IMG/VR virus record: IMGVR_UViG_3300007513_000001
Span: 186,001-250,000 of that record
DNA: 64,000 nt
Reading direction: 5' to 3' (one strand)
The notes under the pieces are model-generated. The model was not told the DNA's origin, did no database searches, and worked only from the letters and a program-made list of their open reading frames with translations. Made by a program: the position numbers and the translations under genes. Shown one piece after another: positions 31,514 through 50,220 of the stretch. Every line of letters begins with the position of its first letter. Within the stretch, counting starts at the first letter, position 1.

Positions 31514-31519
31514 CAAATA

Positions 31520-35269: not shown

Positions 35270-35321
35270 TTTTTAGTTTCCTTTTATAAAATATAAATAT
35301 TAATGATAAAGTGAGATACTA

Positions 35322-35612: not shown

Positions 35613-35613
35613 A

Positions 35614-35642
35614 GTGAAAAACCTCTCGTTATTTGATATAAT
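35614..35642 (+). promoter_or_regulatory. Sigma70-like promoter for dnaE
   Basis: GTGAAA-N17-TATAAT with an extended TG. Confidence 0.65.
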
Positions 35643-35665
35643 GGATTATCAATAGAGGTTTTTAA

Positions 35666-38600
35666 GTGAAGGTTCCTAGTAAGTTTTTTGGTTTGCATTC
35701 CCATTCTGGTTTTTCTATTTTTGATGGTCTTGGATACCCCCAAGAGCATATTGACTTTTGCCGCGAAAATGGATTAGATGGTTGGTCTTTGACCGATCAT
35801 GGTCATATGAACGGTTTTGCGCATGCTTATCTCCATACAGAAAAATTAAATAAAGCTGGAGGCAACTTTAAGCTTATTCCGGGTTGTGAAATGTATGTCC
35901 ACCCAGATTTAGACGTGTGGAAGCTAGATTATGAAATAAACAAAATGGCTAAAAAAGGCGACAAAGAAGCTTTGGATATTCTAAAAAAGCAAAGAGAAGC
36001 AATTCAAACTCCGCTTTTAGCTTTTGTAGATGAACACGATGAAACTTTAGATGTCGGTTTAGAGGGTGCCTCTTTAACTGTTGAAAACGAGGAAGAAACG
36101 AAATCAGGAAAATTTTACGATCCAATCAAACGTCGACACCATTTAGTAGTTTTACCGAAAACGTCTGAAGGTCTACAAAGGTTGTTTCATTTGATTTCTA
36201 GAGGGTACACAGAAGGATTCTATAGGTTTCCAAGAGTGGACTATAAGATGCTTAAAGAGGCAGCCAAGGGAGGCCATCTAATGGTTTCGACAGCTTGTAT
36301 TGGCGGCCCTTTAGCTTATGACGTATTTCAACCACTACAAGAAACTAACTTTGAAGATCTTATTCCTTCGCTTTTTGATGACGAATCTTTGAGAAATAAA
36401 ATTCTTTCTAAGTTTGAATATTCTTATGACCAGCTCGCAGACGCTGTTGGCGAAGAAAACGTTATGCTAGAACTTCAATTCAACAAGCTTCCAGCTCAGC
36501 ACTTAGTGAATAGAGCAATATTAGAATTTGCAAGAACACGGTCTTTAACCGACCAACTTGTCGTTACTTGCGATTCTCATTATGCTTCTCCAGAGCACTG
36601 GAAAGAAAGAGAACTCTATAAAAAGTTGGGCTGGCTAAATTATAAAAGCTTTAATCCAGACAATCTTCCAAAATCTAAAGACGATCTTAAGTGTGAGCTT
36701 TATCCTAAAAATGCTCAACAGGTGTGGGAATCTTATCTTGAAACTTCTGCTGAGCATGATTTTTATAATAGCGATGAAATATTTGAAGCTATCGAAAGAA
36801 CTCACGATGTAGCTCACGAAATGATTGGCGAGATACACCCAGACCGCAAAATGAAACTTCCGTCGTATGTCGTTCCAGAAGGGGTGACAGCAAATAAAGC
36901 TCTTTTAGAAGCTTCTAAAGAGGGGCTGGTCAAGCGAGGGCTAGCAAATAAGCCAGAATATGTGGAGCGGATGAAAACCGAGCTAAAAGTTATTTTTGAT
37001 AAAAACTTTTCTGAGTATTTTCTTACAATGAAAGCAATTATTGATTTAGCTCGAGAAAAAATGCTAGCTGGCCCAGGTCGAGGCTCTGGTGCGGGATCTT
37101 TAGTAAACTATGCACTGTATATTACGGATATCGATCCTGTAGAATATGGGCTTTTGTTTGAGCGTTTTATGTCTCCAGAGCGTACTGAAATGCCAGATAT
37201 CGATACAGATATTGCGGATAGAGATGAGCTCATCAAGATTCTTAGAAGTAATTTTGGAAATAAAAACGTAATTCCAATTTCAAATTACAATACTTTTAAA
37301 ATCAAGAGTCTTCTTAAAGATGTATCTAGGTTTTACGGCATTGAGTTTTCTGAAGTAAACAAAACTTTAGCTTCATTAGAAAGAGAAGTAGCCCAAGGAA
37401 GAAAAGCTGACGGCGTAGATGCAGCTTTTGATATTAGTTTTGAAGAAGCTAAAAAGTATTCTACGAAAGTCAGAGATTATCTAGAAAAATACCCGCAAAT
37501 TGCTGATCCTATAAACGTGTTATATAAGCAAAACAAGGCTCTCGGCCGACACGCTGGTGGAGTAATTGTATCTGAAAAGATCGAAGAAAGAATGCCGTTG
37601 ATTGTTGCTAGGGGAGAAATGCAAACTCCTTGGGTAGAAGGCATGAACTATAAACATCTAGAAGAATTTGGGTGGATCAAATTTGATTTACTTGGATTGG
37701 AAACACTTAGAATTATTGAGAGGACTATTTCTCTTGTTTTAGAAAAGTCTGGAATAGAAAATCCTTCTTTCGAGCAAATTGTTGAATGGTACAATTCTCA
37801 TATTGCTCCAAATGTGATAGATTTCAACGACCAAAAAGTTTATGAAAATGTTTATCACTCTGGAAGATGGGCTGGAATTTTTCAGTGTACTCAGCGAGGA
37901 GCTCAAGCGCTTTTCAAAAGAGCTAAGCCGGTAGGGTTAGTTGATTTGGCTACTTTGACTTCTATTTACCGACCAGGTCCACTGTCTGCCAAAGTAGACA
38001 AACTTTATATTAAGGCTAAAAACAATCCAGAAAATGTTTTTTATGGTCATCCATTGATTGAACAAGTTCTTAATTCAACTTATGGAATGATTATTTTTCA
38101 AGAGCAAGTAATGGAGCTTTGCCACGTGGTTGCTGGATTCCCTAAAGCTGAATGTAACAAACTTAGAAAAATGATGAAGCCAGTTGGTTCTGGTAATGAA
38201 AACATAAAGAAAGCTGCCGCCCTTAAGAATAAGTTTGTAGAAGGCGCATCAAAAAATGGTGTAGAGAAAAATATTGCTAGCGAGCTTTATGATAGGATTC
38301 TGTATTTCTCTGGGTACGGATTTAATAAGTCTCACGCGGTTTCTTATGCTGTGAACTCATATCATTGTGCATGGTTCATGACCTATTTTGAACAAGAGTG
38401 GATTCAAGCTTACTTAGAAGCATGTTCAGGAAATCCTAAAAAGCTTTCAAAGGCTTTAAGCGAAGTAAAGGCGCTTGGCTATAAAATAGTCCCAATTGAC
38501 ATTAATAAAGCTGGTAAAGCTTGGACTTGCATAGACGATAATTCTTTGATGCCCTCATTTTTGTCTTGCAAAGGTGTGGGCGCAGCAGCGGTTGAAGAAA

Positions 38601-39265
38601 TTTTGGAAAAACGCCCTTACAAATCGCTTGAAGATATGTTTTGGAGTGAAGATGGAACTTGGAAGCATGCTAAATTCAACAAGAGAGCTATAGAGTCCTT
38701 GATAAAAATTAGAGCTTTTGACTCCCTAGAGTGCGTCGGCCCAGACAAAGATTTTAAGAGTTATGCGCATATGCACTCTGTTGTTATAGAAAACTTTAAC
38801 GAGCTTAGAAAACGTACTAAGAAAGATCCTTATCGTGGAAAAAATAATTTCTTTAAAATTCTTGTAGAGAGCTCTGAAATTTCTGAGTGGTCTTTCGACG
38901 CAATGATGAATTTTGAACAAGAGCTTTTGGGAACCATTAATGTAGAAGCTCTTTTACCAGAAAAATTTGTAAAAAGAATGAATGACAAAAATATTCTTTC
39001 TTTAGATGAACATTGTGGTAGAGAGTTTTACTGGTTTGTTTTAACAAAAGCAATCCCCAAACTCACAAAAAACAAGAAGCCGTACTTACTCTTGAACGGC
39101 ATAGCTTCAACAGGAAAATCTCATAGAATGTTTTGCTGGGGAGTGCCCAAAGATGCTGATTTAGATCCTTTTACTTTTTGCATCGCAGAAGTAGATAAAA
39201 ATGATTTCGGAATGTCTACGAAGTGGAACAGGATCAAAAAATTTAGCTTTAATGATCTTTCTTAA
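35666..39265 (+). CDS. dnaE: DNA polymerase III alpha subunit (family C)
   Basis: PHP motifs HSH..FS..DG, TDHG, GCE, CDSHY; also GPGRGSGAGSLV, FERF, PDIDTD, RHAGG, KFDLLGL and GYGFNKSHA. Confidence 0.96.
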   Translation: MKVPSKFFGLHSHSGFSIFDGLGYPQEHIDFCRENGLDGWSLTDHGHMNGFAHAYLHTEKLNKAGGNFKLIPGCEMYVHPDLDVWKLDYEINKMAKKGDKEALDILKKQREAIQTPLLAFVDEHDETLDVGLEGASLTVENEEETKSGKFYDPIKRRHHLVVLPKTSEGLQRLFHLISRGYTEGFYRFPRVDYKMLKEAAKGGHLMVSTACIGGPLAYDVFQPLQETNFEDLIPSLFDDESLRNKILSKFEYSYDQLADAVGEENVMLELQFNKLPAQHLVNRAILEFARTRSLTDQLVVTCDSHYASPEHWKERELYKKLGWLNYKSFNPDNLPKSKDDLKCELYPKNAQQVWESYLETSAEHDFYNSDEIFEAIERTHDVAHEMIGEIHPDRKMKLPSYVVPEGVTANKALLEASKEGLVKRGLANKPEYVERMKTELKVIFDKNFSEYFLTMKAIIDLAREKMLAGPGRGSGAGSLVNYALYITDIDPVEYGLLFERFMSPERTEMPDIDTDIADRDELIKILRSNFGNKNVIPISNYNTFKIKSLLKDVSRFYGIEFSEVNKTLASLEREVAQGRKADGVDAAFDISFEEAKKYSTKVRDYLEKYPQIADPINVLYKQNKALGRHAGGVIVSEKIEERMPLIVARGEMQTPWVEGMNYKHLEEFGWIKFDLLGLETLRIIERTISLVLEKSGIENPSFEQIVEWYNSHIAPNVIDFNDQKVYENVYHSGRWAGIFQCTQRGAQALFKRAKPVGLVDLATLTSIYRPGPLSAKVDKLYIKAKNNPENVFYGHPLIEQVLNSTYGMIIFQEQVMELCHVVAGFPKAECNKLRKMMKPVGSGNENIKKAAALKNKFVEGASKNGVEKNIASELYDRILYFSGYGFNKSHAVSYAVNSYHCAWFMTYFEQEWIQAYLEACSGNPKKLSKALSEVKALGYKIVPIDINKAGKAWTCIDDNSLMPSFLSCKGVGAAAVEEILEKRPYKSLEDMFWSEDGTWKHAKFNKRAIESLIKIRAFDSLECVGPDKDFKSYAHMHSVVIENFNELRKRTKKDPYRGKNNFFKILVESSEISEWSFDAMMNFEQELLGTINVEALLPEKFVKRMNDKNILSLDEHCGREFYWFVLTKAIPKLTKNKKPYLLLNGIASTGKSHRMFCWGVPKDADLDPFTFCIAEVDKNDFGMSTKWNRIKKFSFNDLS

Positions 39266-39294
39266 TTGTAAAAATCACAAACTCGGAGTAGAAT
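39266..39294 (+). promoter_or_regulatory. Sigma70-like promoter heading the base-modification operon
   Basis: TTGTAA-N17-TAGAAT; ATG lies 6 nt downstream. Confidence 0.65.
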
Positions 39295-39300
39295 AATCTT

Positions 39301-40146
39301 ATGGTTGAAAACTATATAAATTTAAATCAAGCGTTTGTTGAAGAATTAGTAGACCTCAAATTTAACGGTGAAGAAGTTAAGTCGAGAGGATTCACGCAAA
39401 AAGAAAAATTGTTTTGCTCTTTCATTATAAAAGATCCAACAGATCTAAAGATCAAAGTGCCCGCCCGCAAGTTTAATGAAGATTACGCTGTTTTAGAGTG
39501 GCTTTGGTATCTTACTTCCAATTGCGAAGTAAGCAATATTGGGAAGTTTGCTGATATATGGAATAAAATAGCTGATGAAGATAATTTAGTTGAATCAAAT
39601 TATGGAAGTTATATAAAGCCTGCTTGGTATGATTTAGTAAACGAGCTTCTTAACGATAGAGATACAAGAAGAGCTACTTGCGTAATTAACCAACCTCACC
39701 ATCGATGGAAAAATCCTAACGACTACCCCTGCACTCATTATATTCATTTTTTTATTAGAGGAGATGCTCTTCACTTGGGAGTTTACATGAGATCTAACGA
39801 TGCAGTTTTTGGTTTTTGCAATGACGTTTTTACTTTTGCGTTGTTTCAACAGCTTATGTTAAACGAACTAAATTCTCGTGGTGCTAATTTAAAGCTAGGC
39901 AATTATTACCATTCAGCTGGAAGCTTTCATGTTTATGATCGACATTACGAAATGCTAGAAAAAATCTCAAAAAACTACTTTAAGAAAGCTAGAAAAGAAG
40001 GGTATCCCACATTTGAAAAAATGACTTTAAATCCAGATTTAACTTGGCCAAAAATGGAAAAATTTATATCTTTTTTTGAAGAAAACCTAGACAAAGACGA
40101 AATATCGAGTAAGATTAAAGAGATTAGGGAGATTATCTTTCAATGA
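39301..40146 (+). CDS. Thymidylate-synthase-fold dNMP-modifying enzyme, dCMP hydroxymethylase-like
   Basis: TRRA, catalytic YPCT, MRSNDAVFGFCND and SFHVY. Has Asp at the position of E. coli ThyA Asn177. Confidence 0.85.
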   Translation: MVENYINLNQAFVEELVDLKFNGEEVKSRGFTQKEKLFCSFIIKDPTDLKIKVPARKFNEDYAVLEWLWYLTSNCEVSNIGKFADIWNKIADEDNLVESNYGSYIKPAWYDLVNELLNDRDTRRATCVINQPHHRWKNPNDYPCTHYIHFFIRGDALHLGVYMRSNDAVFGFCNDVFTFALFQQLMLNELNSRGANLKLGNYYHSAGSFHVYDRHYEMLEKISKNYFKKARKEGYPTFEKMTLNPDLTWPKMEKFISFFEENLDKDEISSKIKEIREIIFQ

Positions 40147-40424
40147 ATATTCTTGACGAAGCTAACAAAATTATTAACGAAAGATCTGAAGAAAAAGAAA
40201 GACAATATGGCCCGATGGGCGAAGGCTTAGAGCGCGCTGCAATGATTGCTTCTGGGATGACTGGAAAAGATTTTACTGCCGACGATATTTTTGCTGCTTT
40301 AGTAGCTCTTAAGTTTTCGAGGCACTCATACAATTATAAAGAAGATAATTTTTTAGATGCCGCAGCTTATCTGGGCGCGTGGAATAACTACATTCAAAAG
40401 GGTTTGAAAAATGAAAATAAGTAA
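40143..40424 (+). CDS. Small all-alpha protein (DUF6378 / NTP-pyrophosphohydrolase-like)
   Basis: IL.EA..II..R....YG and LK.SR.......D...D...Y pattern. Confidence 0.6.
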   Translation: MNILDEANKIINERSEEKERQYGPMGEGLERAAMIASGMTGKDFTADDIFAALVALKFSRHSYNYKEDNFLDAAAYLGAWNNYIQKGLKNENK

Positions 40425-40845
40425 AGTAAGAAGTGTTAAAACTCCAACTCGAGGAACTCCTGAATCTGCAGGCATAGATTTTTATGTTCCGCAAGGAATG
40501 GTTGTTAGCTTACCTCCGGGTTATTCTTGTTTGATGCCAAGCGGAATAAAGGCTAATGTTCCAGCAGGCCATGCTTTAATTGCATTTAACAAGAGTGGCG
40601 TAGCTGTAAAAAAGAATCTCCACGTCGGCGCATGCGTTGTTGATGAAGATTATCAAGGAGAGATCCATATTAACTTGATCAATGTTGGCAGAGAAACAGT
40701 GAAAATTTCTTCTGGAGAAAAAATTATACAATTTGTTTTACTTCCAGTATTTTATGACACAATTGAAGAAGTAGAACTAGAAAATCTTTATGAACAACAA
40801 ACCCAGCGCGGCGAAGGCGGATTTGGAAGTACGGGAGTTGAGTGA
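40411..40845 (+). CDS. dut: Trimeric dUTPase
   Basis: SAGIDF, KSG, VDEDYQGEI, IIQFV and RGEGGFGSTG. Confidence 0.93.
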   Translation: MKISKVRSVKTPTRGTPESAGIDFYVPQGMVVSLPPGYSCLMPSGIKANVPAGHALIAFNKSGVAVKKNLHVGACVVDEDYQGEIHINLINVGRETVKISSGEKIIQFVLLPVFYDTIEEVELENLYEQQTQRGEGGFGSTGVE

Positions 40846-41900
40846 TGAATTATTTTGTAGATTATGAATTACCAAAAAGTTGCAAAATCGGTATTGATGG
40901 ATTAGAGCGCAATATTCCAACTCGTAAACATAGTCACAACGCGGCTTGGGTTCATTTGTATAAAAACATGCTTCAATCTGCCGGCTGGGAAGACGTTCAC
41001 GTCTTGGGAAATCATGATACTTACGAAGGCTATGAAGCCATGATTTTTTATCCTGGAATTGCTTATTCGGGAGCCATTAATTTCTTTTTTGGAGTGGATG
41101 ATAATGTCGTTAGAAGATTTTCTAGAGTTCAAGACTTTGAAGGCCCGACATTTATTTTAAATCATGAAATGCCCCTTATCGGAAACACGATCAAAGGAAG
41201 ACTTCATAATAAATCTACTAGTAGTCGAGTTGGAAACCTTAAGCTAGACTTGTTAGACGATATCTGCAAGTCTACTCGTAGAATCGACTATGTAGAAAGA
41301 TCGAAAAAACTTTGTTTTGGAGACAGCCACTGCTTCTCAACTTATGCCCCCGGGTATTCTGTTTGTCGAAACGATGGTCTTACACTTTTTTCTACTTTAC
41401 GAAATGGAGTGAAGCAAACCATTGAAGAAAAATCGGGTATGATGACTAAAGATTTAACTCATCTTACGTTTTATATGGGTAATATTGATATTCGACATCA
41501 CCTCATGAGACAAGAAAACCCTTTTGAAAAAGCCCATGCAATGGGAATAGAATTGGGATACCAGCTTAAATCTTTAGGCATTCCAAACATAGAAATTGTT
41601 CACGTTCTTCCAATTGAAAATATTTCTCGAAAACTTCCAAAAACTGGCTACTATAAGAAGACTCCATATTTTGGAACTTGGGAAGAAAGAACCAAACTAG
41701 TCAATACATTTAACAACGCTGTGGATAAAATTTGTATAGAAAACAAATGGAATACTTTCCATTGGCCCGAAGAGTTTTTAAATGATTCTAAAGAGTTGGA
41801 TTTTGAATATATGGAGCGTCCAAAAAGTGTTCATTTAAGCCCAGTTTCTTATAGGTGGGATCTTTTTGAAAATAAATTAAATAGCTTGCATAGTAGCTAA
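40842..41900 (+). CDS. Conserved phage protein with an SGNH/GDSL-like C-terminal domain
   Basis: FGDSH (block I), G..L (block II), YMGNIDIRHH (block III) and SVHL (block V). Confidence 0.55.
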   Translation: MMNYFVDYELPKSCKIGIDGLERNIPTRKHSHNAAWVHLYKNMLQSAGWEDVHVLGNHDTYEGYEAMIFYPGIAYSGAINFFFGVDDNVVRRFSRVQDFEGPTFILNHEMPLIGNTIKGRLHNKSTSSRVGNLKLDLLDDICKSTRRIDYVERSKKLCFGDSHCFSTYAPGYSVCRNDGLTLFSTLRNGVKQTIEEKSGMMTKDLTHLTFYMGNIDIRHHLMRQENPFEKAHAMGIELGYQLKSLGIPNIEIVHVLPIENISRKLPKTGYYKKTPYFGTWEERTKLVNTFNNAVDKICIENKWNTFHWPEEFLNDSKELDFEYMERPKSVHLSPVSYRWDLFENKLNSLHSS

Positions 41901-41914
41901 AAATGGAGAAAAAT

Positions 41915-43105
41915 ATGCCAAAAAATAAATCAATTCGAGTTGCAATTGTCGGTGTCGGAAATTGCGCTAATTCTTTCTATCAAGGATTAACATATTATGC
42001 TGGATACACCGAAGGCCAAGAGCGCGACGGCGTTATGAAGAGCCGAATCGGAGGATATTCAGTAGCTGACCTCGATGTTGTAGCTGCGTTTGATATAGAC
42101 AAAAGAAAAGTCGGCAAGTGTTTTAGAGAAGCTATGTGGGCTAAACCAAACTGTACTCCAGAATATGAACCTAATGTTCCCGATGGTCCAATAGTTCAGA
42201 TGGGCCCAGTGTTAGATGGGGTACCGTCTTTGATGAAATCTTATCCAGACGATGAAGCTTTTAGACCAGCTGATTTAGAGCCCGTAGATGTGGCTCAGAT
42301 ATTAACAGACTTAAAGGTGGATATTCTAATCAACTATCTACCAGTGGGTTCTCAGAAGGCTACTGAGTGGTATGCAGAACAGTGTCTAAAGACGGGAGTT
42401 TCTCTTCTTAACTGTATTCCAGTCTTTATTGCTTCTAATCCAATTTGGGAACAGAAGTTTATTGATGCTGGAATTCCTTTGGTTGGGGACGATATGAAAT
42501 CTCAGTTTGGGGCGTCTATTTTATCTCAAATGCTGCAAGAATTAGCTTTCGCCCGAGGACTAAATGTGAATGCTCATATTCAGCGTAATGTTGGTGGAAA
42601 TACTGATTTCTTGAATATGGTCGATCAATCTAGGTTAAAGTATAAAAAGGTTTCTAAGGAAAATGTAATTCGATCTCAGCATGTTATCAGGGGAGTTGAT
42701 CCAGAAGAATCATTCTTACATGCTGGCCCTTCAGAATATATTCGTTTTTATGGAGATAACAAGGTTGCCAATTTTAGAGTAGAGATGGAAGGTTTCCTCG
42801 GCGCACCAGTAATTCTAGACGCGCAACTTTCCGTAATCGACTCTCCAAACTCTGGTGGAGTTGTTATCGACGCGGCTCGATATCTAAAGGTTGCGAGAGA
42901 AATGGGGATTGTTGGAGCTTTGCGTGGGCCATCTGCCTTTACGCAAAAAACCCCGCCCCAACAATTAATGTTTTCAGAAACTCTTTACGAATGCGACGCT
43001 CTTTCAGAGAGAAAGCTTACTAGATTTACAAAGAGGCAAACTCAAAATTACAGTGCGGAAGAGTTGTATCAATCTTGCCCAGCAGGAAACAAGGAAGTAG
43101 ATTAA
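41915..43105 (+). CDS. ino1: Myo-inositol-1-phosphate synthase (bacterial/archaeal type)
   Basis: VAIVGVGNCA, AFDID.RKVG, NYLPVGS, GDD.KSQ.GA, NVGGNTDFLNM, YGDNK and DSPNSGGVVIDA. Confidence 0.95.
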   Translation: MPKNKSIRVAIVGVGNCANSFYQGLTYYAGYTEGQERDGVMKSRIGGYSVADLDVVAAFDIDKRKVGKCFREAMWAKPNCTPEYEPNVPDGPIVQMGPVLDGVPSLMKSYPDDEAFRPADLEPVDVAQILTDLKVDILINYLPVGSQKATEWYAEQCLKTGVSLLNCIPVFIASNPIWEQKFIDAGIPLVGDDMKSQFGASILSQMLQELAFARGLNVNAHIQRNVGGNTDFLNMVDQSRLKYKKVSKENVIRSQHVIRGVDPEESFLHAGPSEYIRFYGDNKVANFRVEMEGFLGAPVILDAQLSVIDSPNSGGVVIDAARYLKVAREMGIVGALRGPSAFTQKTPPQQLMFSETLYECDALSERKLTRFTKRQTQNYSAEELYQSCPAGNKEVD

Positions 43106-43106
43106 A

Positions 43107-43823
43107 ATGCCGAAAATCCACGAGCAAAAAGGGAAATTATTTAATCCTGAAGCTGGAAATTTTGAAGAATGCATTATTAAACTAAACCCTCGTAATAACT
43201 TTTGGTATCGTCCTGGCACTTTTGATCTTAATTCTATTAGAGAGTGCCGAGACAACTATAGTGAAATAGACACTTGCGGAAAAGTTGTTCTAGATCTGGG
43301 TGCCAATATTGGCGGTTTTGCTCGGATGGCTCTTCAAAAGGGCGCGAAACAAGTTATTGCTCTAGAGCCGTGCCCATATAATTTTCAACTGCTAGAGATT
43401 AATGCTGAAAATGCTGAAAACATAAATGCAGCAGTTTCAGAAGAAGATACTGATAGCGTTGTTTTTCATTATGCTAGTTCTAAAAGAAATTCTGTTTCTT
43501 CTTCTACGGTTCGACGCAGAAACGCTTCGGGAACCACTATTTCAGTCCCAGGCCTTTCTTTTGGAGGGCTATTAGAGAAATATAAGCCTGAAATTCTTAA
43601 AATTGATATCGAAGGAAAAGAGTATGATATTTTAGATTCGATTAAAGAGATACCAGATTTTGTAGAAGTTGTTGGTATTGAATTTCACAATACTCGAAAA
43701 CCATATTCGGAATATCCTTCTCGTTTTTTTCCAGAATCTACTTGGAAAAAAGTAGAGCACCCTATTTTGATGTACGGACAGAAAAAGGTTTTAGATTACA
43801 CATTTTATCGCAAAGTTGTTTAG
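43107..43823 (+). CDS. FkbM-family SAM-dependent (O-)methyltransferase
   Basis: VLDLGANIG, ALEP...NF..L..N and LKIDIEG.EY....EFH. Confidence 0.88.
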   Translation: MPKIHEQKGKLFNPEAGNFEECIIKLNPRNNFWYRPGTFDLNSIRECRDNYSEIDTCGKVVLDLGANIGGFARMALQKGAKQVIALEPCPYNFQLLEINAENAENINAAVSEEDTDSVVFHYASSKRNSVSSSTVRRRNASGTTISVPGLSFGGLLEKYKPEILKIDIEGKEYDILDSIKEIPDFVEVVGIEFHNTRKPYSEYPSRFFPESTWKKVEHPILMYGQKKVLDYTFYRKVV

Positions 43824-43832
43824 GAGAAAATA

Positions 43833-44249
43833 ATGGTTGTTAATGGTTTTGATATTGACGGAGTGATTCACCTTGGAGATAGTGTCTGTGGAATCCGCCC
43901 TGGTCCTGGTGATGTGATTATTACCGGTCGAAGTTTTGAGGAAGAGGCCGAAACTCTAGCTTTTCTTCGTCGTAATGGAATTAATAATCCAGTATTTTTT
44001 AACCAGTGTCATTATGATGAAAAAACTCGTGAAGGTTCTGGTTGGCACAAAGGCGAAACTATTAAGTTGTTGCATCGAGCTGGCCTCAGCATTCGATATT
44101 TTTTCGAAGACGATGAAGTTCAAAAAGCCGAAATTGAAAGAATTTTAGCAGAAAAAGAAATCTGGAATATGCCAACCAAAGTAATTCACGTTAACAATCC
44201 ACATGTAGCGAAAGAGAATAGACGTCACTTAGAGGATTTACATGAGTAA
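43833..44249 (+). CDS. Capless HAD phosphatase
   Basis: GFDIDGVI, IITGRS, HK and FFEDD. Confidence 0.85.
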   Translation: MVVNGFDIDGVIHLGDSVCGIRPGPGDVIITGRSFEEEAETLAFLRRNGINNPVFFNQCHYDEKTREGSGWHKGETIKLLHRAGLSIRYFFEDDEVQKAEIERILAEKEIWNMPTKVIHVNNPHVAKENRRHLEDLHE

Positions 44250-45687
44250 TTCTGAGCTTCTTAAAATGACTGATAAGCAGCTTTTTGATGAAATTCCCTC
44301 TCATAAAAAGCAAGATTTTATAGACTTTATAAAAGAGCTTAATCGAAGAGAGTATTTAGTTAGATTTGCAAAATCGTGCACCTTTGAAAGCTTTCAGCAT
44401 TTACCTGGTACTTCTTTTAAATTTGGTAATGGTTTTATCGTAAATGGAAAATCAGTCCCTTATTTCCACCCCAATCGTAGCTTTCATGATGAAATTATTT
44501 GGTTGAATGAAAATCTTTTCTACAACCCTCATGCTACTTTTGAAGACAAGCTCATCAACGCAGCGATTGTAAAGTTTTATGGGCCATCTAACACTTTGAA
44601 GCTTATTGCTAGCGGAACAGGAAAGAATTTTGTAGATTATAAACGATTCATAGGAGACGCTAAGTATCTTCAACAAGTTTGTGTAAATTTGGAAACAGCT
44701 GTGAAAAATAAAGAGAAGATATACGGAACCACAGAACTAAGAACAAGCCTACAAACTGCTGCTCGAAACTACGCAAGAGACGTTGGTTCTCCAATAGATA
44801 AACTTGAATTAATTCCGTTGGTAGATAGAAAAGTTAGATCATGTCGACCTTCTGATATTCTTTTTTGGTTTACTAAGATCGGTCCAGATTTTGTAAATTT
44901 TTATAAGAAGACTCCAAACATGGAAGAGTCTTTCAAGTTTTTAAATTCTTTTAGAGGGATTGGAAATTATTATGGTTATCATTTTAGTTGCAATCTTGCT
45001 CGTATGCCCTCCGTTGGAAATTTAATATTCAAGGGTACCCCTGGCAAAATCGATGAAGATGATGAATATGTTGTTCCGGGTGTTGGAGCGATGTCTGCGA
45101 TAAATTGGTTTTATGAACACCGCGGCCACTCTATAAACACAAAAGTTGGAAAAAAATTAATAAACGCTATTCGCGAACACCAAAATGATTTCTTCGATTT
45201 AAAGAAATCTGACAATTCTAAATTTTATATGGAAAAAGTTTCTGAGCTTGGGTATTTTACTAATTTCGGCTGTGAAATATCTTGCTGCCAGTTCGGAGTT
45301 TATCGAAGATTAAGAGAAGATAAAAAATTAGCTTTAAGAAGAGCAGCTGCACCAATTTCAAAAGAGGAAGTCAAAATGATTCTTACGCCAAAAACCCTAA
45401 TGCAAAAACTGGGTCTTATTTCAGAAGATAAGCCTTCTGAAGAACACATCCAAACCACCAATCCCGCTTTAGATTTTTCTTCTACAAGCAAAGAAGATTT
45501 AATTCTTGCTATTGTCGATGAATCTGGAGGAGCTTGTTCACATTCTGCAGTGGCAAAAATGATAGAAGAAAAGGGATATACTCAATATAAACAGTCTGGA
45601 AGCTGGAAAGAAAGCTGGGTAATAATGAGAGAATTAGTTAAAAAGGGTGCTCTAGTTAAAGATGGAAAATTTTATCGGAGGTCGTAA
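44242..45687 (+). CDS. aGPT-Pplase / amino acid:DNA transferase-like protein (HhH glycosylase fold) with a C-terminal wHTH-like tail
   Basis: GIGNYYGYH...NL (HhH), VVPGVGA..AI and EISCCQF..Y, matching the family G.G.f.a / GpGa / E...Ce..ky pattern. Confidence 0.65.
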   Translation: MSNSELLKMTDKQLFDEIPSHKKQDFIDFIKELNRREYLVRFAKSCTFESFQHLPGTSFKFGNGFIVNGKSVPYFHPNRSFHDEIIWLNENLFYNPHATFEDKLINAAIVKFYGPSNTLKLIASGTGKNFVDYKRFIGDAKYLQQVCVNLETAVKNKEKIYGTTELRTSLQTAARNYARDVGSPIDKLELIPLVDRKVRSCRPSDILFWFTKIGPDFVNFYKKTPNMEESFKFLNSFRGIGNYYGYHFSCNLARMPSVGNLIFKGTPGKIDEDDEYVVPGVGAMSAINWFYEHRGHSINTKVGKKLINAIREHQNDFFDLKKSDNSKFYMEKVSELGYFTNFGCEISCCQFGVYRRLREDKKLALRRAAAPISKEEVKMILTPKTLMQKLGLISEDKPSEEHIQTTNPALDFSSTSKEDLILAIVDESGGACSHSAVAKMIEEKGYTQYKQSGSWKESWVIMRELVKKGALVKDGKFYRRS

Positions 45688-46865
45688 TGCAAAACGTGAG
45701 GTGGGGAACTATCATTCCCCTTATTGGGGGTAGCGCTATAGGGTGCTCTCAAGCCACTAAAAATAAGCCAGAATTTCATCTTAGTTATTCTGCTTTTGGC
45801 GCTAACGAAAAGTATTTAACCGATTATTGGAAAGACGTACCTCGTATAGTTTTAGATGAAGGTGGAGAAATCCCAAATCAGCAAATTGATTTTATCAACT
45901 CAGTTTGTCCATGCGCGGGTTTAAGTCAGCTTAATACTTCTAGAAGCAAAGATATGCGTGAATCTAAAAATTACTGGATGTACGAATCCGCTCAAAGGAT
46001 AATGGGAGAACTTAAACCGAGAGTTTACTGGGGAGAAAATGCTCCCGGCCTTTTTACTAATTCGGGTGCGTACGTACGTGACAAGCTTAAAACCCTGGCC
46101 AAAGAACATGGTTATTCCTTTTCTCTTTATAAAACTGATACTCAAAAACATGGAATACCACAGCGAAGAGTAAGAACTTTTTATTTTTTTTGGAGAGATA
46201 CTAATCCGCCTATTTTAAATTATTTTGATCAAACTCCTGTCCCTTTTGCAGAGTACATCAAAGAGATACCAGATACAGCAACTTTACAAGATCAGTTTAA
46301 TATTGCGGGAAAAATTTCTGACAATTTTGATTCTTACGCTTTCGTTCTTCAGAAGTTGAAAATAACCCACAGAGAATTCGTGAAATCTAATGATTCCGGG
46401 TCTATTCATTCAATTTTTTCTTACCTTGCTGAAAATGAACTTTTAAAAGAGTGCATAGACTGGATAGAAAAAAACAAAAATGAAGAAACAGCTGAACACA
46501 GAAGATTGAAAGCTATTTATAAAAAAGTTCAATCTGGTGGGAGATTTATGGATGCTTCTCCGGGGTATTATTATGCTAGAACTAACGCTATAGTGGGAAG
46601 GACTTTAACGCATTTAGTTCACCCCACTGAAGATCGCGGCATGTCTATTCGAGAGCTGCTTCATATGATGGGGCTGCCTCATGACTTTGAAATGAGCGAT
46701 AGAAAATCCTTGAATGTAATAGCGCAGAACGTTCCTACGTGTACAGCCCGAGATATGGCTACTCAAGTTATTGAATACTTAAACGGTGGTTTACAAATTG
46801 CAGAAAACAGTTTTTTAATGCAAAATAACTTAAAACAGGAGACCACGTTATGCGAGCCCTTGTAA
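45687..46865 (+). CDS. DNA cytosine-C5 methyltransferase-fold protein with an atypical motif I
   Basis: Motif IV CPCAGLS, VI ENAP, VIII PQRRVR, IX R.MS.RE...MGLP and X AQNVP. Motif I reads IPLIGG instead of FxGxGG. Confidence 0.85.
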   Translation: MQNVRWGTIIPLIGGSAIGCSQATKNKPEFHLSYSAFGANEKYLTDYWKDVPRIVLDEGGEIPNQQIDFINSVCPCAGLSQLNTSRSKDMRESKNYWMYESAQRIMGELKPRVYWGENAPGLFTNSGAYVRDKLKTLAKEHGYSFSLYKTDTQKHGIPQRRVRTFYFFWRDTNPPILNYFDQTPVPFAEYIKEIPDTATLQDQFNIAGKISDNFDSYAFVLQKLKITHREFVKSNDSGSIHSIFSYLAENELLKECIDWIEKNKNEETAEHRRLKAIYKKVQSGGRFMDASPGYYYARTNAIVGRTLTHLVHPTEDRGMSIRELLHMMGLPHDFEMSDRKSLNVIAQNVPTCTARDMATQVIEYLNGGLQIAENSFLMQNNLKQETTLCEPL

Positions 46866-47836
46866 CTGGAGGTTGCGGATTTATTGGATCATGCATCTCT
46901 AAAAAATTAGTAGATTCAGGATGGGATGTTGAGATAGTTGACGATATGTCTAATGGGAATTATGAGTTTTTAGATGGCTATCGCATAAGATCAGTTCCGG
47001 TTCAGCTTGGTGAAAGTTTTGAAAACCAAGTCAAAAAGCAAGAACATCAAATTTTAGTTTTGGTTGGAGATTTTACTAGCTACGAAGTCGTTAGAAGAAT
47101 TGTGGAAAAAAAATATGATGTAATATTTCATTGCGCAGCCAATCCACGCGTAGAATACTCAGTTCAAAACCCTGTTGAAACAACAGACGAAAATCTAACT
47201 AAAACAATTAAGCTTTTTACTCACTCTATTGGAAACGTCAAAAGGATAGTGTTTTCCTCTAGTTGTTCAATATACGGTGATCCGTGGACTCTTCCTACTA
47301 CAGAATCTCACGGAAAAAATCCAAATAGTCCATACGCGCTTCAAAAGCTTTGTGTCGAAGAGTTTGCGCGACTGTATTCTAAAACTTATGATTTAGACAT
47401 AGCTTGTTTGCGATACTTCAATGTTTATGGCCCTTATCAATATGGAGGGTCTCCATATTCTACAGCTATCGTATCTTGGTGTGACAAAGTAAAAAATGGT
47501 TTACCGCTTCGCAGTGATGGTGATGGAACGCAGTCTAGAGATATGGTTTTTGTAGAAGACGTTGCGAGAGCAAATATTTTAGCTGCGACTCATAAAGAAA
47601 ACTTTAGTGGAAAATGCATTAATATTGGAACTGGAGCTTCTTATACTAATAATCAAATTTTAGATATTTTTAAGTCTAAGTTTCCCGACATAGAAATTAG
47701 TCATGCACCAGAAAGATCCGGAGACGTAAAACACACTCAGGCATGCACAAAAGAAGCAAGGAATTTTTTAGGATTCAGAACTGAATATTCTTTAGAAGAA
47801 GGTCTAGAAAAAACTTTTGACTGGTGGGAGATTTGA
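46850..47836 (+). CDS. NAD-dependent NDP-sugar epimerase/dehydratase
   Basis: GGCGFIG, FSSS...YG, YALQK, LRYFNVYGP and GDG.Q.RD. Confidence 0.92.
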   Translation: MRALVTGGCGFIGSCISKKLVDSGWDVEIVDDMSNGNYEFLDGYRIRSVPVQLGESFENQVKKQEHQILVLVGDFTSYEVVRRIVEKKYDVIFHCAANPRVEYSVQNPVETTDENLTKTIKLFTHSIGNVKRIVFSSSCSIYGDPWTLPTTESHGKNPNSPYALQKLCVEEFARLYSKTYDLDIACLRYFNVYGPYQYGGSPYSTAIVSWCDKVKNGLPLRSDGDGTQSRDMVFVEDVARANILAATHKENFSGKCINIGTGASYTNNQILDIFKSKFPDIEISHAPERSGDVKHTQACTKEARNFLGFRTEYSLEEGLEKTFDWWEI

Positions 47837-48393
47837 TGAAAAATGAATTTGTTATGTTTGTCGGACCCATGTTTGGTGGGAAAACTACTAAACTTTTAAG
47901 CGCGATAGACAGATATCGATATCAAGGTAGAGACATTCATGTGTTTAAACCGATAGTAGATGAAAGATATTCTAAGGAAGAAATAGTAACCCATTGGGGA
48001 ACTAAAATTCCAGCTACTAGAATCACCTCTCCAGTTAGCAGCCTTCATCCAGTATTTGAGCCTTTCTATCACCTTAAAGAATCTTGCGTTTTAGCAGTAG
48101 ATGAAGCTTTTATGTTAGAGGGAGTTGGAAAAGTTTTGGTCGACCTGTTTAGAAGAGGCCACACAGTGCTTGTTTCTTCTCTTCAGCTTTCTTCTGATTT
48201 TACTCCATATAAAGAGCTTCAAACCATGCTTCCGTACGCTACAAAAGTAGAAGTTTGTCCGGCAGTATGCTCTACGTGCGGCGCAGACGCGCACTATACT
48301 AAAAAGGTTGGCGGTCGTTCTGATCACGCAATCGAGGTAGGGGGATCAGAGATGTATCAGCCTAAGTGTTTAGAGCATTTTTATTTGGGATAA
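47836..48393 (+). CDS. tdk: Thymidine kinase
   Basis: GPMFGGKTT, D.RY, VDEA, C..CG and Y.P.C..H. TGATG coupling to the preceding gene. Confidence 0.9.
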   Translation: MKNEFVMFVGPMFGGKTTKLLSAIDRYRYQGRDIHVFKPIVDERYSKEEIVTHWGTKIPATRITSPVSSLHPVFEPFYHLKESCVLAVDEAFMLEGVGKVLVDLFRRGHTVLVSSLQLSSDFTPYKELQTMLPYATKVEVCPAVCSTCGADAHYTKKVGGRSDHAIEVGGSEMYQPKCLEHFYLG

Positions 48394-48395
48394 TT

Positions 48396-48424
48396 ATGAA
48401 ATTCTAGTTAATTCTAGTTATAAT
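48396..48424 (+). promoter_or_regulatory. Sigma70-like promoter containing a 10-bp direct repeat
   Basis: ATGAAA-N17-TATAAT; ATTCTAGTTA occurs twice at 48401-48420. Confidence 0.5.
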
Positions 48425-48428
48425 TTTA

Positions 48429-48869
48429 TTGAAGGATATTTTAACATTGTCAGACAAACACCACAAATCATCTTGGAAGTCTAGATCTTCTCTTGCTGTT
48501 ACCCCATGGGGATCTGAGATCCGATGGGCTGCAACTGCCGGAGTAAATGGAAAATGCCTCAGCATTAACAAGGGCATGAGAACAAGCTTAAAATACTATA
48601 AGTTAAAAGACGAAGTTCTTTTTCTTTACAAGGGGAAGATTTTAGTAACTCACGGAGATGAAAAAACTATAACGCATCCAGAAACACATCCATATGTTCA
48701 ATCTATTCTTGCGCCTGGAGAAATGGTAATAGTGCAGAGCCATTGCCCTTACAGGATTGAAGCTTTAGAAGATTCTGAAGTTATTGAAATAGGCTCTCGA
48801 GGTCCAGGCGACACAGTCATGCTGGAGGATGATTTCGGGAGAGCAGATAAAGCAGATAAGGAGCTTTAA
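48429..48869 (+). CDS. Cupin (mannose-6-phosphate-isomerase type II C-terminal-like); start uncertain
   Basis: PWG.E, TSL..Y..K.E, RI.A.EDS...E and EDDFGR. Confidence 0.7.
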   Translation: MKDILTLSDKHHKSSWKSRSSLAVTPWGSEIRWAATAGVNGKCLSINKGMRTSLKYYKLKDEVLFLYKGKILVTHGDEKTITHPETHPYVQSILAPGEMVIVQSHCPYRIEALEDSEVIEIGSRGPGDTVMLEDDFGRADKADKEL

Positions 48870-49775: not shown

Positions 49776-50173
49776 GACCGTCGTGGGATAAAATATGGAT
49801 GGATTTCGCAAGCTCAATCGCTGAGAGATCTTACGACCCAAGATTTCAAGTGGGCGCTGTTATTATTACTGAAGACAACAGCCAAGTTTTAGCTGTTGGA
49901 TATAACGGAAATTACGCTGGAGGTCCCAATGAAGTAGAATCAGAAACCCCTGGGGAATCTGGCATGCTTCATGCTGAAATTAATGCATTACTTAAAATGG
50001 ATTACAACAACCCTAAAAAGAAAAAGCTTTATCTAACTCTTTCTCCTTGTAGAATGTGCGCAAAGGCTATAATTAATAGCGGAATTAATGAAGTAGTTTA
50101 TGCTGAATCTTATAGGGACCTATCGGGGATAGAACTTTTAAAAGAATGTGGCATATCTGTAAGACACGTTTGA
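49772..50173 (+). CDS. dCMP deaminase
   Basis: VGAVI, GYNG, HAE.NA and SPC.MC. Confidence 0.92.
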   Translation: MRPSWDKIWMDFASSIAERSYDPRFQVGAVIITEDNSQVLAVGYNGNYAGGPNEVESETPGESGMLHAEINALLKMDYNNPKKKKLYLTLSPCRMCAKAIINSGINEVVYAESYRDLSGIELLKECGISVRHV

Positions 50174-50220
50174 TTCAGAACTTAATATGTAGTAATGAAT
50201 TGTAATTAACGAGGACCGTA

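What the first reader, a model, noticed from the sequence alone, without database searches (positions are those of the whole stretch)
41915..44249. Ino1-FkbM-HAD cassette: a self-contained (methyl-)inositol synthesis module in a phage
Three adjacent genes form a plausible route: glucose-6-P to inositol phosphate (Ino1), to inositol (HAD phosphatase), with O-methylation (FkbM). They sit between the SGNH-like and aGPT-Pplase-like genes, which suggests a swappable donor-synthesis module. Alternative uses are osmolyte, phosphatidylinositol or inositol-lipid supply.
Basis: inference. Interest (0 to 1): 0.75.

Follow-up and report, generated by a model that had tools for sequence, protein, structure and literature searches.

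The report
Phage inositol module in DNA-modification operon
A jumbo phage carries genes for making the sugar-like molecule inositol inside its DNA base-modification operon, and the same gene pair sits in such operons in hundreds of other phages, which suggests an undescribed inositol-bearing DNA modification that has not yet been shown chemically.

Summary
The three ORFs exist as described, all on the + strand: Ino1 41915(41903)-43105, FkbM 43107-43823, HAD 43833-44249. They are conserved in related viral contigs, with dN/dS about 0.03-0.09.

- **Ino1** is a close inositol-3-phosphate synthase homologue: E 1.4e-88 to M. tuberculosis Ino1, and 62% identity to a cellular Dyadobacter enzyme.
- **The 138-aa protein** is a capless HAD phosphatase with all four motifs invariant.
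- **Ino1 and HAD form a conserved pair.** Of 58 distinct viral HAD relatives, 56 have Ino1 just upstream.
- **The pair always sits in DNA base-hypermodification clusters**, of three kinds:
  - TS-like / SGNH-like / HMUDK_hel (this window);
  - TET / AADT / P-loop kinase (Caulobacter phage Cr30);
  - FolE / QueC / DpdA / QueE (Stenotrophomonas phage Moby).

  The kinds are intermixed on the Ino1 tree, which needs at least 16 context changes.
- **The cassette's position.** Here it splits two genes that are fused into one ORF in Aeromonas phages 31 and 44RR2.8t.
- **FkbM is optional.** It tracks the DNA-side enzymes and also occurs without Ino1.

Best reading: phage-made inositol, or inositol phosphate, is a donor for hypermodifying 5-hydroxymethylpyrimidine. 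In this phage the base is probably 5hmC, not 5hmU. No attachment chemistry is shown, and I found no paper describing this link.

The parts
39301..40146 (+). Thymidylate-synthase homologue, predicted dCMP hydroxymethylase. It would supply the hydroxymethyl-pyrimidine handle.
   Evidence: PF00303 at 3.6e-16. Best PDB matches are MilA CMP hydroxymethylase (2e-22) and T4 gp42 (3e-18). Asp stands at the positions of E. coli ThyA L143 and N177, and D169 is kept. The rule for reading these positions comes from PMC13326640.
40143..40424 (+). DUF6378 protein, co-conserved with the TS-like and dUTPase genes.
   Evidence: PF19905 at 2.7e-11. Syntenic in all type-A loci.
40411..40845 (+). dUTPase-family nucleotide pyrophosphatase.
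   Evidence: PF00692 at 2.5e-25, with a weaker dCTP-deaminase-like hit.
40842..41900 (+). Two-domain protein with an SGNH/GDSL-fold C-terminal half ('X352'). In Aeromonas phages it is fused to the HMUDK_hel protein.
   Evidence: No Pfam or PDB sequence hit. The model has pLDDT 90. Foldseek gives probability 1.0 to GDSL esterases, sialate O-acetylesterase and PatB. G160-D161-S162-H163, N214 and H219 are invariant and D216 is nearly so. It matches phrog_17781 positions 11-335 of 795, and tblastn hits the same ORF as the next-but-three gene in phage 31.
41915..43105 (+). Ino1: myo-inositol-3-phosphate synthase homologue (alternative start at 41903).
   Evidence: PF01658 at 78 bits. 1gr0 at E 1.4e-88 over residues 9-355. 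62% identical to a cellular Dyadobacter inositol-3-phosphate synthase. D197, S200, N229, N233, D235, K248, K252, D313, S314, N316 and S317 are invariant in 71 phage homologues. TIGR03450 scores 323.6 bits, below its 638-bit equivalog cut-off.
43107..43823 (+). FkbM-family SAM-dependent methyltransferase: an optional tailoring enzyme.
   Evidence: PF05050 at 1.2e-14. TIGR01444 at 1.2e-22. D63xGxxxG and K165xDIEGxE are invariant. Presence is variable.
43833..44249 (+). Capless HAD-superfamily phosphatase, the fixed partner of Ino1.
   Evidence: Invariant DxDGV, TGRS, K and EDD motifs. The model has pLDDT 92. The most probable structural matches are T4 Pnkp 3'-phosphatase, the LNS2 domain, GmhB and MDP-1, all at E >= 1e-3. 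phrog_415 'polynucleotide kinase' at 4e-7. Ino1 lies upstream of 56 of 58 relatives.
44242..45687 (+). HMUDK_hel-domain protein with no P-loop kinase domain: a putative DNA base-directed transferase or targeting subunit.
   Evidence: PF18723 at 30.4 bits against a cut-off of 25. No GxxxxGK[ST] motif in the sequence. Atlas neighbours are HMUDK_hel, ADDT and aGPT-Pplase3 clusters. C349 is invariant. It overlaps the HAD stop codon by 8 nt. It matches phrog_17781 positions 376-779.
45687..46865 (+). C5-cytosine DNA methyltransferase-like enzyme, co-occurring with HAD and HMUDK_hel.
   Evidence: PF00145 at 3.1e-19. PCAGLS, GENA, QRRVR and AQNVP motifs are present. It co-occurs in L027, L029, L104 and L108 in other gene orders.
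46850..47836 (+). NAD-dependent SDR epimerase/dehydratase (GalE-like).
   Evidence: PF01370 at 2.8e-48. TIGR01179 galE scores 174 bits, below its cut-off. It recurs next to X352 in L071, L082, L087, L097 and L108.
47824..48393 (+). Thymidine kinase, the last gene of the tightly packed array.
   Evidence: PF00265 at 5.8e-32.

Best explanation
**What it is.** Ino1 converts host glucose-6-phosphate to myo-inositol-3-phosphate, and the small capless HAD enzyme removes the phosphate. Together they are a portable two-gene unit that gives the phage a cyclitol most bacterial hosts do not make.

**Where it acts.** In this phage the unit lies in one tightly packed operon with:
- a TS-like enzyme predicted to make 5-hydroxymethyl-dCMP;
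- a dUTPase-family enzyme;
- an SGNH-like protein;
- a kinase-less HMUDK_hel protein, related to amino-acid:DNA transferases and carrying an invariant cysteine;
- a C5-methyltransferase-like enzyme;
- a GalE-like SDR.

**Proposed mechanism.** After replication, the DNA-directed proteins (SGNH-like plus HMUDK_hel, possibly the C5-MT-like enzyme) activate the 5-hydroxymethyl group. They then couple it to a hydroxyl of inositol or inositol-3-phosphate. In the second case the HAD enzyme removes the phosphate on the DNA. FkbM then O-methylates the product, or the base-side hydroxyl, as an optional tailoring step. The result would be bulky cyclitol-bearing pyrimidines that block host nucleases.

**Shown:** gene identities, conservation, the Ino1-HAD pairing, and its repeated embedding in DNA-modification clusters.

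**Inferred:** every chemical step, the identity of the modified base, and the order of events.
For: - **Ino1 looks like an authentic synthase.**
- **HAD motifs and fold.**
- **Pairing.** Ino1 lies upstream of 56 of 58 distinct HAD relatives, 36 of them within 150 bp.
- **Contexts of the pair**:
  - A: TS / DUF6378 / dUTPase / SGNH / Ino1 / HAD / HMUDK_hel;
  - B: TET-JBP / ADDT / Ino1 / HAD / P-loop nucleotide kinase 3, including Cr30 (RP13 has ADDT upstream of the pair);
  - C: FolE / Ino1 / HAD / QueC (/ DpdA / QueE), including Moby.
- **Independent associations.** The context types are intermixed on the Ino1 tree, which needs 16 changes; well-supported branches force at least 6-9 per type.
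- **Position.** The cassette sits between two genes that are one ORF in Aeromonas phages.
- **Operon-like packing.** Genes abut or overlap, which would permit translational coupling.
- **Purifying selection.**
- **No lipid or nucleotide-sugar route.** The complete genome lacks CDP-alcohol phosphatidyltransferase and NTP_transferase, and the controls were positive.
- **Precedents.**
  - O-nucleophile transfer to 5-PmdU by AADTs: serine in phage ViI (PMC8989533).
  - Phage-encoded donor synthesis that includes a small HAD phosphatase, in RB69 and DLP3 (PMC13326640).
Against: - No enzyme here is known to use inositol, and no inositol-modified nucleoside has been reported.
- No P-loop hydroxymethyl kinase of the PF18751 type and no PF18724 AADT were found in this genome. 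The activation step is therefore unexplained. The PF18724 search matched none of the control genomes either, so that negative carries little weight.
- In context C (7-deazaguanine) I can name no plausible attachment chemistry. This hints that the pair may serve a role common to all three contexts other than being the appended group.
- HAD relatives occur without a nearby Ino1 in L029/L030 and L100.
- Ino1 scores below the NCBIfam equivalog cut-off, and K199 is Arg in most phage homologues.
- The genome also holds two glycan-synthesis islands that could use inositol.
Confidence: 0.5

Rival explanations
1. Inositol is made for a purpose other than DNA. Ino1-HAD would be an auxiliary metabolic module supplying free inositol for glycans, virion decoration, lipids, osmoprotection or host manipulation. 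It would lie among DNA-metabolism genes only because that is where phages keep early metabolic genes.
For: - The closest named cellular homologue is a Bacteroidota inositol-3-phosphate synthase.
- The genome has two large glycosyltransferase islands with GT4 enzymes (the family of MshA, by general knowledge) and a GFO/IDH/MocA oxidoreductase.
- The pair occurs with chemically unrelated base pathways, including 7-deazaguanine.
- Published genome papers treat phage Ino1 as an incidental bacterial-like gene (PMC9025141).
Against: - The pair is not merely near DNA genes. It sits inside the modification clusters: between ADDT and the kinase, between FolE and QueC, and between two halves of a gene pair that is fused elsewhere.
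- The association was re-formed many times on the Ino1 tree.
- Small contigs carry the pair with only DNA-modification genes around it.
- The genome has no CDP-alcohol phosphatidyltransferase and no sugar nucleotidyltransferase.
Confidence: 0.2
2. The HAD protein is not an inositol-phosphate phosphatase. It would act on DNA or nucleotides: removing unused 5-phosphomethyl groups, a 3'-phosphate, or dNMPs. Its pairing with Ino1 would then reflect a shared pathway, not consecutive steps. Inositol phosphate itself could be the end product or the appended group.
For: - It has a capless HAD architecture. Its most probable structural matches are T4 Pnkp 3'-phosphatase and LNS2 domains, which act on large substrates.
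- It matches PHROG 'polynucleotide kinase'.
- It overlaps the HMUDK_hel gene here and abuts the P-loop kinase in type-B clusters.
- It occurs with HMUDK_hel and C5-MT but without a nearby Ino1 in L029/L030 and L100.
Against: - Ino1 is its upstream neighbour in 56 of 58 cases.
- Capless HADs such as GmhB also act on small sugar phosphates, and GmhB is among the structural matches.
- All Foldseek E-values are weak (>= 1e-3).
Confidence: 0.2
3. The Ino1 homologue makes a different cyclitol phosphate, or uses a different sugar phosphate. This would parallel Ari2, the MIPS relative that makes a five-membered cyclitol phosphate. The product would then not be myo-inositol.
For: - The second-best PDB match is the five-membered-cyclitol-phosphate synthase 6k96, at E 5.8e-48.
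- The TIGR03450 score is half the equivalog cut-off.
- Position 199 is Arg in 46 of 71 phage homologues, where the window protein and M. tuberculosis Ino1 have Lys.
Against: - The match to true Ino1 is far stronger: 301 bits against 167.
- It is 62% identical to an annotated cellular inositol-3-phosphate synthase.
- The conserved motifs shared with 1gr0 are invariant.
Confidence: 0.08

Closest known systems
Thymidine hypermodification pathways of phages M6, ViI, PhiW-14, SP10 and PaMx11 (5-HMUDK + AADT/aGPT-Pplase; PMC5889632, PMC8989533)
   Same: - A hydroxymethyl-pyrimidine is installed first.
- A helical, DNA-glycosylase-like protein of the HMUDK_hel/ADDT group is encoded beside genes that supply or tailor the appended group.
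- Tailoring enzymes differ between close relatives.
- Type-B relatives of the module (Cr30, L020, L080 and others) carry TET, ADDT and a P-loop kinase.
   Different: - The known donors are glycine, serine, putrescine and glutamate. None needs a phage-encoded synthesis route, and none is a cyclitol.
- This window has no P-loop kinase domain on its HMUDK_hel protein. A search with the one kinase family tested (PF18751) and one with the AADT family (PF18724) found nothing in the genome.
- An SGNH-like protein takes the place of the kinase domain as fusion partner.
- The TS homologue carries the dCMP signature, not the dUMP one.
De novo myo-inositol synthesis (Ino1/MIPS plus inositol monophosphatase), as in Actinobacteria, Bacteroidota, archaea and eukaryotes
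   Same: The first enzyme is a close homologue. A phosphatase gene follows it, so the same two-step logic is available.
   Different: - The phosphatase is a 138-aa capless HAD, not an IMPase-family enzyme. No Pfam family matched it.
- The cellular Dyadobacter Ino1 stands alone, with no HAD neighbour.
- No downstream lipid or mycothiol genes are present.
Glycosylated hmC / 5hoC systems with phage-encoded donor synthesis (T-even phages; RB69 and DLP3 arabinosyl-5hoC, PMC13326640)
   Same: - A TS homologue makes the modified dCMP before replication.
- A cluster encodes synthesis of the appended group, including a small HAD-like phosphatase predicted to dephosphorylate a sugar phosphate.
- The diagnostic TS residues are used the same way.
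   Different: - Those systems use NDP-sugars and GT-B glycosyltransferases.
- The window's operon has no nucleotidyltransferase and no glycosyltransferase.
- The window's TS homologue keeps D169, so it is not a 5hoC synthase.
Phage 7-deazaguanine DNA modification clusters (FolE/QueD/QueE/QueC/DpdA)
   Same: Relatives of the Ino1-HAD pair sit between FolE and QueC in Moby, L024, L068, L070, L074, L083 and L098.
   Different: The window has no deazaguanine genes. No known deazaguanine derivative contains a cyclitol, to my knowledge, and searches found none.

Membership tests
Myo-inositol-3-phosphate synthase (MIPS/Ino1) | Inos-1-P_synth catalytic domain above Pfam's gathering score | tested here: met
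   PF01658 at 78 bits against 27, covering residues 203-314 and the full profile.
Myo-inositol-3-phosphate synthase (MIPS/Ino1) | Full-length similarity to an enzyme of solved structure, with the shared motifs conserved | tested here: met
   1gr0 at E 1.4e-88 over residues 9-355. GDDxKS, NVGGNxDFLN, SKKxSK and DSPNS are aligned, and their key residues are invariant in 71 phage homologues.
Myo-inositol-3-phosphate synthase (MIPS/Ino1) | Score above NCBIfam's equivalog cut-off (TIGR03450 mycothiol_INO1) | tested here: not met
   323.6 bits against a cut-off of 638. That model is built on the actinobacterial clade, and the window protein is 62% identical to a Bacteroidota enzyme.
Myo-inositol-3-phosphate synthase (MIPS/Ino1) | Converts glucose-6-phosphate to inositol-3-phosphate with bound NAD+ | not testable with these tools
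   Needs an enzyme assay.
HAD-superfamily phosphatase | Four catalytic motifs: DxDx(T/V), (S/T), K, (D/E)D | tested here: met
   D7, D9, G10, V11, T31, K64, K73, E92, D93 and D94 are invariant in 36 diverse relatives.
HAD-superfamily phosphatase | Rossmannoid HAD core fold | tested here: inconclusive
   The model has pLDDT 92. Foldseek probabilities are 0.97-1.0 to T4 Pnkp phosphatase, the LNS2 domain and VSP, and 0.72-0.93 to GmhB and MDP-1. TM is 0.5-0.6 and all E-values are >= 1e-3. No Pfam or NCBIfam HAD model matched.
Inositol monophosphatase family (IMPase, SuhB-like) | IMPase fold and sequence family | tested here: not met
   No Pfam family matched at E <= 0.01, and the fold is HAD-like. 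It may work like an IMPase, but it is not a member.
FkbM-family methyltransferase | Methyltransf_21 / TIGR01444 domain above cut-off, with the SAM-binding glycine motif | tested here: met
   PF05050 at 55.2 bits against 22.7. TIGR01444 at 80.9 bits against 37.7. D63xGxxxG and K165xDIEGxE are invariant.
5-HMUDK/AADT thymidine hypermodification system | P-loop 5-hmdU DNA kinase | tested here: not met
   The HMUDK_hel protein has no Walker A motif. No PF18751 match in the complete genome. Only that one P-loop kinase family was searched.
5-HMUDK/AADT thymidine hypermodification system | HMUDK_hel or ADDT (aGPT-Pplase) helical DNA-directed domain | tested here: met
   PF18723 at 30.4 bits against 25, the only copy in the genome. 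PF18724 was not found, but that search matched none of the control genomes either.
5-HMUDK/AADT thymidine hypermodification system | A source of 5-hydroxymethyl-uracil in DNA (dUMP hydroxymethylase or T-dioxygenase) | tested here: not met
   The TS homologue has Asp at the ThyA N177 position, which is the dCMP signature (rule from PMC13326640). This is a sequence inference, not an assay. Tet_JBP was not searched in the window's own genome.

The most novel reading that the evidence does not exclude
Hundreds of phages would covalently attach a cyclitol to their DNA bases. The cyclitol would be myo-inositol, O-methylated in some lineages. Cultured examples include Caulobacter phage Cr30, the Stenotrophomonas Menderavirus group and Ralstonia phage RP13. 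The donor would come from a portable Ino1-HAD module that plugs into at least three different base-modification chassis. In this jumbo phage the chassis would be a kinase-independent one: an SGNH-like enzyme, fused to the HMUDK_hel domain in Aeromonas phages, would take the place of the P-loop kinase in activating 5-hydroxymethylcytosine.
Probability: 0.35. Interest if true: 0.85.

Novelty: new variant of a known kind. Interest (0 to 1): 0.75.

Why it matters
Phage DNA hypermodifications decide which restriction and CRISPR defences a phage escapes. They have also yielded new enzymes and DNA chemistries.

- **A new class of appended group.** All known pyrimidine hypermodifications append amino acids, polyamines or sugars. 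A cyclitol would be new, and it would be the first non-lipid, non-thiol use of bacterial-type inositol synthesis that I know of.
- **It is widespread.** 419 viral contigs encode a relative of the HAD partner.
- **It is testable now.** The module occurs in phages already in culture, so one LC-MS run on virion DNA could settle the question.
- **It points to other untested parts.** The kinase-less HMUDK_hel proteins, the SGNH-like partner and the C5-methyltransferase-like enzyme are all untested components of DNA-modification machinery.

Tried and rejected
- **Megablast of 40842-45687 against cultured phages:** no match. The phage has no close cultured relative; its DnaE protein is at most about 30% identical to any.
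- **PDB sequence searches** for the HAD, SGNH-like and HMUDK_hel proteins gave nothing usable.
- **Promoter and terminator scan** of 34000-51000 found no more sites than in shuffled sequence. It cannot define the transcription unit.
- **Complex prediction** of FkbM with the HMUDK_hel protein returned 'no answer'. It counts neither for nor against binding.
- **Own-genome searches** for P-loop nucleotide kinase 3 and ADDT were negative. The ADDT control matched nothing anywhere, so that negative is weak.
- **Literature:** seven searches linking inositol or Ino1 with phage DNA modification, plus one for 5-HMUDK/aGPT-Pplase. None found a paper making the connection, and the 'inositol' hits were names of glycosyltransferase homologues. 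The library lacks most subscription journals, so this is not proof of novelty.
- **Rejected: the HMUDK_hel gene is a 5-hmdU kinase.** It has no kinase domain.
- **Rejected: the TS homologue is a 5hoC synthase.** D169 is retained.
- **Rejected: phosphatidylinositol or CDP-inositol supply.** The needed enzymes are absent.
- **Not done:** mapping Ino1 residues onto experimentally defined catalytic residues beyond the printed 1gr0 alignment, host prediction, and any use of sequencing reads.
Full report
**1. The observation**

The window is bases 186001-250000 of a complete 293,409-bp virus record with direct terminal repeats. Its GC content is about 38%.

- 41903-43105 (400 aa)
- 43107-43823 (238 aa)
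- 43833-44249 (138 aa)

It is preceded by GGAG at 41905-41908, and database relatives are 396 aa, so it is probably the true start.

Every gene from 39301 to 48393 abuts or overlaps its neighbour. The HAD stop codon overlaps the next gene's start by 8 nt. The consensus promoter and terminator scan found no more sites than in shuffled sequence.

**2. What the three proteins are**

*Ino1.*
- It matches Pfam Inos-1-P_synth at 78 bits against a cut-off of 27.
- It matches the M. tuberculosis Ino1 structure 1gr0 at E 1.4e-88 over residues 9-355. The MIPS-related five-membered-cyclitol-phosphate synthase 6k96 is much weaker, at 5.8e-48.
- It is 62% identical to a cellular inositol-3-phosphate synthase from Dyadobacter. 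That gene stands alone in its genome.
- In an alignment of 71 phage homologues, D197, S200, N229, N233, D235, K248, K252, D313, S314, N316 and S317 are invariant. K199 is Lys or Arg.
- It scores 323.6 bits on NCBIfam TIGR03450, below the 638-bit equivalog cut-off. The activity is therefore a strong inference, not a database call.

*FkbM.* It passes both Pfam PF05050 and TIGR01444. It keeps the SAM-binding and DIEGxE motifs.

*The 138-aa protein.*
- It has no Pfam, NCBIfam or PDB sequence match.
- It carries all four HAD motifs, invariant across 36 diverse relatives.
- It folds confidently (pLDDT 92) into a capless HAD core.
- The most probable structural matches are T4 Pnkp 3'-phosphatase, the LNS2 domain, GmhB, MDP-1 and plant VSP. 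All have weak E-values, >= 1e-3.

*Selection.* Against relatives L007 and L010, all three genes have dN/dS of 0.03-0.09. dS is saturated, so the ratios are rough.

**3. The surroundings**

- *39301-40146* is a thymidylate-synthase homologue. Its best solved relatives are the CMP and dCMP hydroxymethylases MilA and T4 gp42.
  - I used the diagnostic positions set out in PMC13326640.
  - It has Asp at the ThyA L143 position and Asp at the N177 position, and it keeps D169.
  - That is the signature of a dCMP hydroxymethylase. It is not the signature of a dUMP hydroxymethylase or a 5-hydroxy-dCMP synthase.
- *Elsewhere in the window:* ThyX, thymidine kinase and dCMP deaminase. Thymine is therefore probably ordinary, and the modified base is probably a cytosine derivative. 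This is a sequence inference.
- *40842-41900* has an SGNH/GDSL-fold C-terminal half. GDSH, N214 and H219 are invariant and D216 is nearly so.
- *44242-45687* matches only the helical domain of 5-hmdU DNA kinases (PF18723).
  - It has no Walker A motif.
  - Its nearest Atlas families are HMUDK_hel, ADDT and aGPT-Pplase3.
  - It has an invariant cysteine, C349. Amino-acid:DNA transferases are thought to use a thiolate (PMC8989533).
- *Fusion of the two flanks.* These two flanking genes match the N- and C-terminal halves of one PHROG. They map to one ORF in Aeromonas phages 31 and 44RR2.8t. The cassette therefore sits between two parts of one functional unit.
- *Downstream:* a C5-cytosine-methyltransferase-like enzyme with intact motifs and a GalE-like SDR.

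**4. Related sequences**

- *Seeded with Ino1.* 23 viral loci were found. The whole block from the TS-like gene to thymidine kinase is syntenic in the closer ones.
- *Seeded with the HAD protein.* 419 viral contigs encode a relative. Among 58 distinct HAD proteins with enough upstream sequence:
  - 56 have Ino1 upstream on the same strand within 1.6 kb;
  - 36 of those are within 150 bp;
  - the other 20 are separated by more than 150 bp: FkbM lies between in the window's clade, an unnamed ~400-aa protein in L102/L103, and nothing my query set recognised in the remainder;
  - the two exceptions are L100 and L104.
- *The pair's neighbours fall into three sets*:
  - A: TS / DUF6378 / dUTPase / SGNH-like / Ino1 / (FkbM) / HAD / HMUDK_hel, also found permuted;
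  - B: TET-JBP / ADDT / Ino1 / HAD / P-loop nucleotide kinase 3, which includes Caulobacter phage Cr30; Ralstonia phage RP13 has ADDT upstream of the pair;
  - C: FolE / Ino1 / HAD / QueC (/ DpdA / QueE), which includes Stenotrophomonas phage Moby.
- *Tree.* On a maximum-likelihood tree of 70 Ino1 sequences the three sets are intermixed. The tree needs 16 changes of context, and well-supported branches alone force at least 6-9 per set. The association with DNA-modification genes therefore arose, or was rebuilt, many times.
- *HAD without Ino1.* HAD relatives occur without a nearby Ino1 in L029/L030 and L100. There they sit with HMUDK_hel, C5-MT and two SDR epimerases.

**5. FkbM is a variable extra**

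- It is missing from many type-A clusters (L018, L031, L042-L062).
- In L008, Ino1 is 92% and HAD 82% identical to the window's proteins. FkbM is 46%, HMUDK_hel 31% and C5-MT 54%. FkbM therefore changes together with the DNA-side enzymes.
- Its subfamily usually sits beside HMUDK_hel or ADDT. Fifteen of the 23 nearest loci also have Ino1, and all but one of those also show HAD.
- L130, L132 and L120 carry HMUDK_hel, FkbM and a TS-like gene close together, with no Ino1 or HAD.
- FkbM-family enzymes are known O-methyltransferases of sugars and of the FK506 cyclohexyl ring (general knowledge). O-methyl-inositol is therefore plausible but not required.
- The complex prediction for FkbM with HMUDK_hel gave no answer.

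**6. Explanation**

I think the pair makes inositol or inositol phosphate as a building block for post-replicative modification of 5-hydroxymethylpyrimidine. In this phage that is probably 5hmC. FkbM would be an optional tailoring step.

- The capless HAD fold leaves open whether dephosphorylation happens before or after attachment.
- The activation step is unknown. There is no P-loop kinase of the expected kind. The SGNH-like partner might activate the hydroxymethyl group in another way; this is speculation.
- Against the lipid and nucleotide-sugar routes, the genome has no CDP-alcohol phosphatidyltransferase and no NTP_transferase.
- The main weaknesses:
  - no enzyme here is known to use inositol;
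  - I can name no chemistry for the deazaguanine context;
  - the genome has two glycan islands that could be another sink.

**7. Comparison and novelty**

- The logic matches known thymidine hypermodification (PMC5889632, PMC8989533). It also matches glycosyl-hmC/5hoC systems that carry their own donor synthesis (PMC13326640).
- The window fails two defining features of the 5-HMUDK/AADT system: the kinase domain and a 5hmU source.
- The donor would be of a new chemical class.
- I searched the paper library eight times and found nothing linking inositol synthesis to phage DNA modification. One genome paper lists the gene as a stray bacterial-like gene.
- I rate it a new variant of a known kind, with interest 0.75. 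The interest rests on how common the module is and on its presence in cultured phages, where one mass-spectrometry experiment would decide.

Noticed in passing
window 40842-41900 and 44242-45687: The two genes flanking the cassette are the N- and C-terminal halves of a single ~795-aa ORF in Aeromonas T4-like phages 31 and 44RR2.8t (PHG31ORF233c; phrog_17781). In that ORF an SGNH-like domain takes the position that the P-loop kinase holds in canonical 5-hmdU DNA kinases.
   Followed up: partly
window 39301-40146: The TS homologue has Asp at the ThyA L143 and N177 positions and keeps D169. That predicts a dCMP hydroxymethylase, so the cluster may modify cytosine rather than thymine. TS homologues in L021, L022 and L130 have the Asn (dUMP) form instead.
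   Followed up: partly
window 45687-46865: A C5-cytosine methyltransferase-like gene with intact PC, ENx, QxRxR and NV motifs co-occurs with HAD and HMUDK_hel in several gene orders (L027, L029, L104, L108). Its role is unclear in a phage predicted to replace C with 5hmC.
   Followed up: partly
L130:7165-10776 (also L132, L120): A minimal cluster in a small PolA phage: HMUDK_hel (266 aa), FkbM (270 aa), an unknown 240-aa protein and a TS-like gene, with no Ino1, HAD, kinase or ADDT. It could be a DNA hydroxymethyl O-methylation system.
   Followed up: partly
L029:4055-5260, L027:5615-6793, L100, L102-L104: An unnamed ~400-aa protein with no Pfam match recurs next to the HAD gene. This includes loci where Ino1 is absent or not adjacent.
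   Followed up: no
genome G000:C1:82000-91400 and 102100-113400 (outside the window; L196, L197): Two glycan-synthesis islands. They hold GT2, GT4 and GT9 glycosyltransferases, a GFO/IDH/MocA oxidoreductase, a PfkB kinase, NeuB, a carbamoyltransferase, UDP-glucose dehydrogenase and several SDR epimerases. Two 'GT4-conflict' glycosyltransferases sit beside a PD-(D/E)XK nuclease.
   Followed up: partly
window 29658-30464, 31502-32329, 32338-33144, 51976-52662: The window also encodes ThyX, a sulfotransferase-domain protein, an Fpg/Nei-type DNA glycosylase and an Fe/Mn superoxide-dismutase-like protein. It further encodes ClpP, an amidase endolysin, a DnaE-type polymerase, dCMP deaminase and a DHH phosphoesterase.
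   Followed up: no
L025:296-1799: In a contig labelled as a giant-virus MAG (GVMAG), the Ino1 homologue matches in three separate pieces. This suggests frameshifts, an intron or an assembly error.
   Followed up: no
L008:10409-11887, L018:9750-11114, L012:4895-5653: In close relatives where Ino1 is 76-92% identical, the HMUDK_hel protein is only 24-27% identical by tblastn. This looks like replacement of the DNA-side enzyme rather than gradual divergence.
   Followed up: partly
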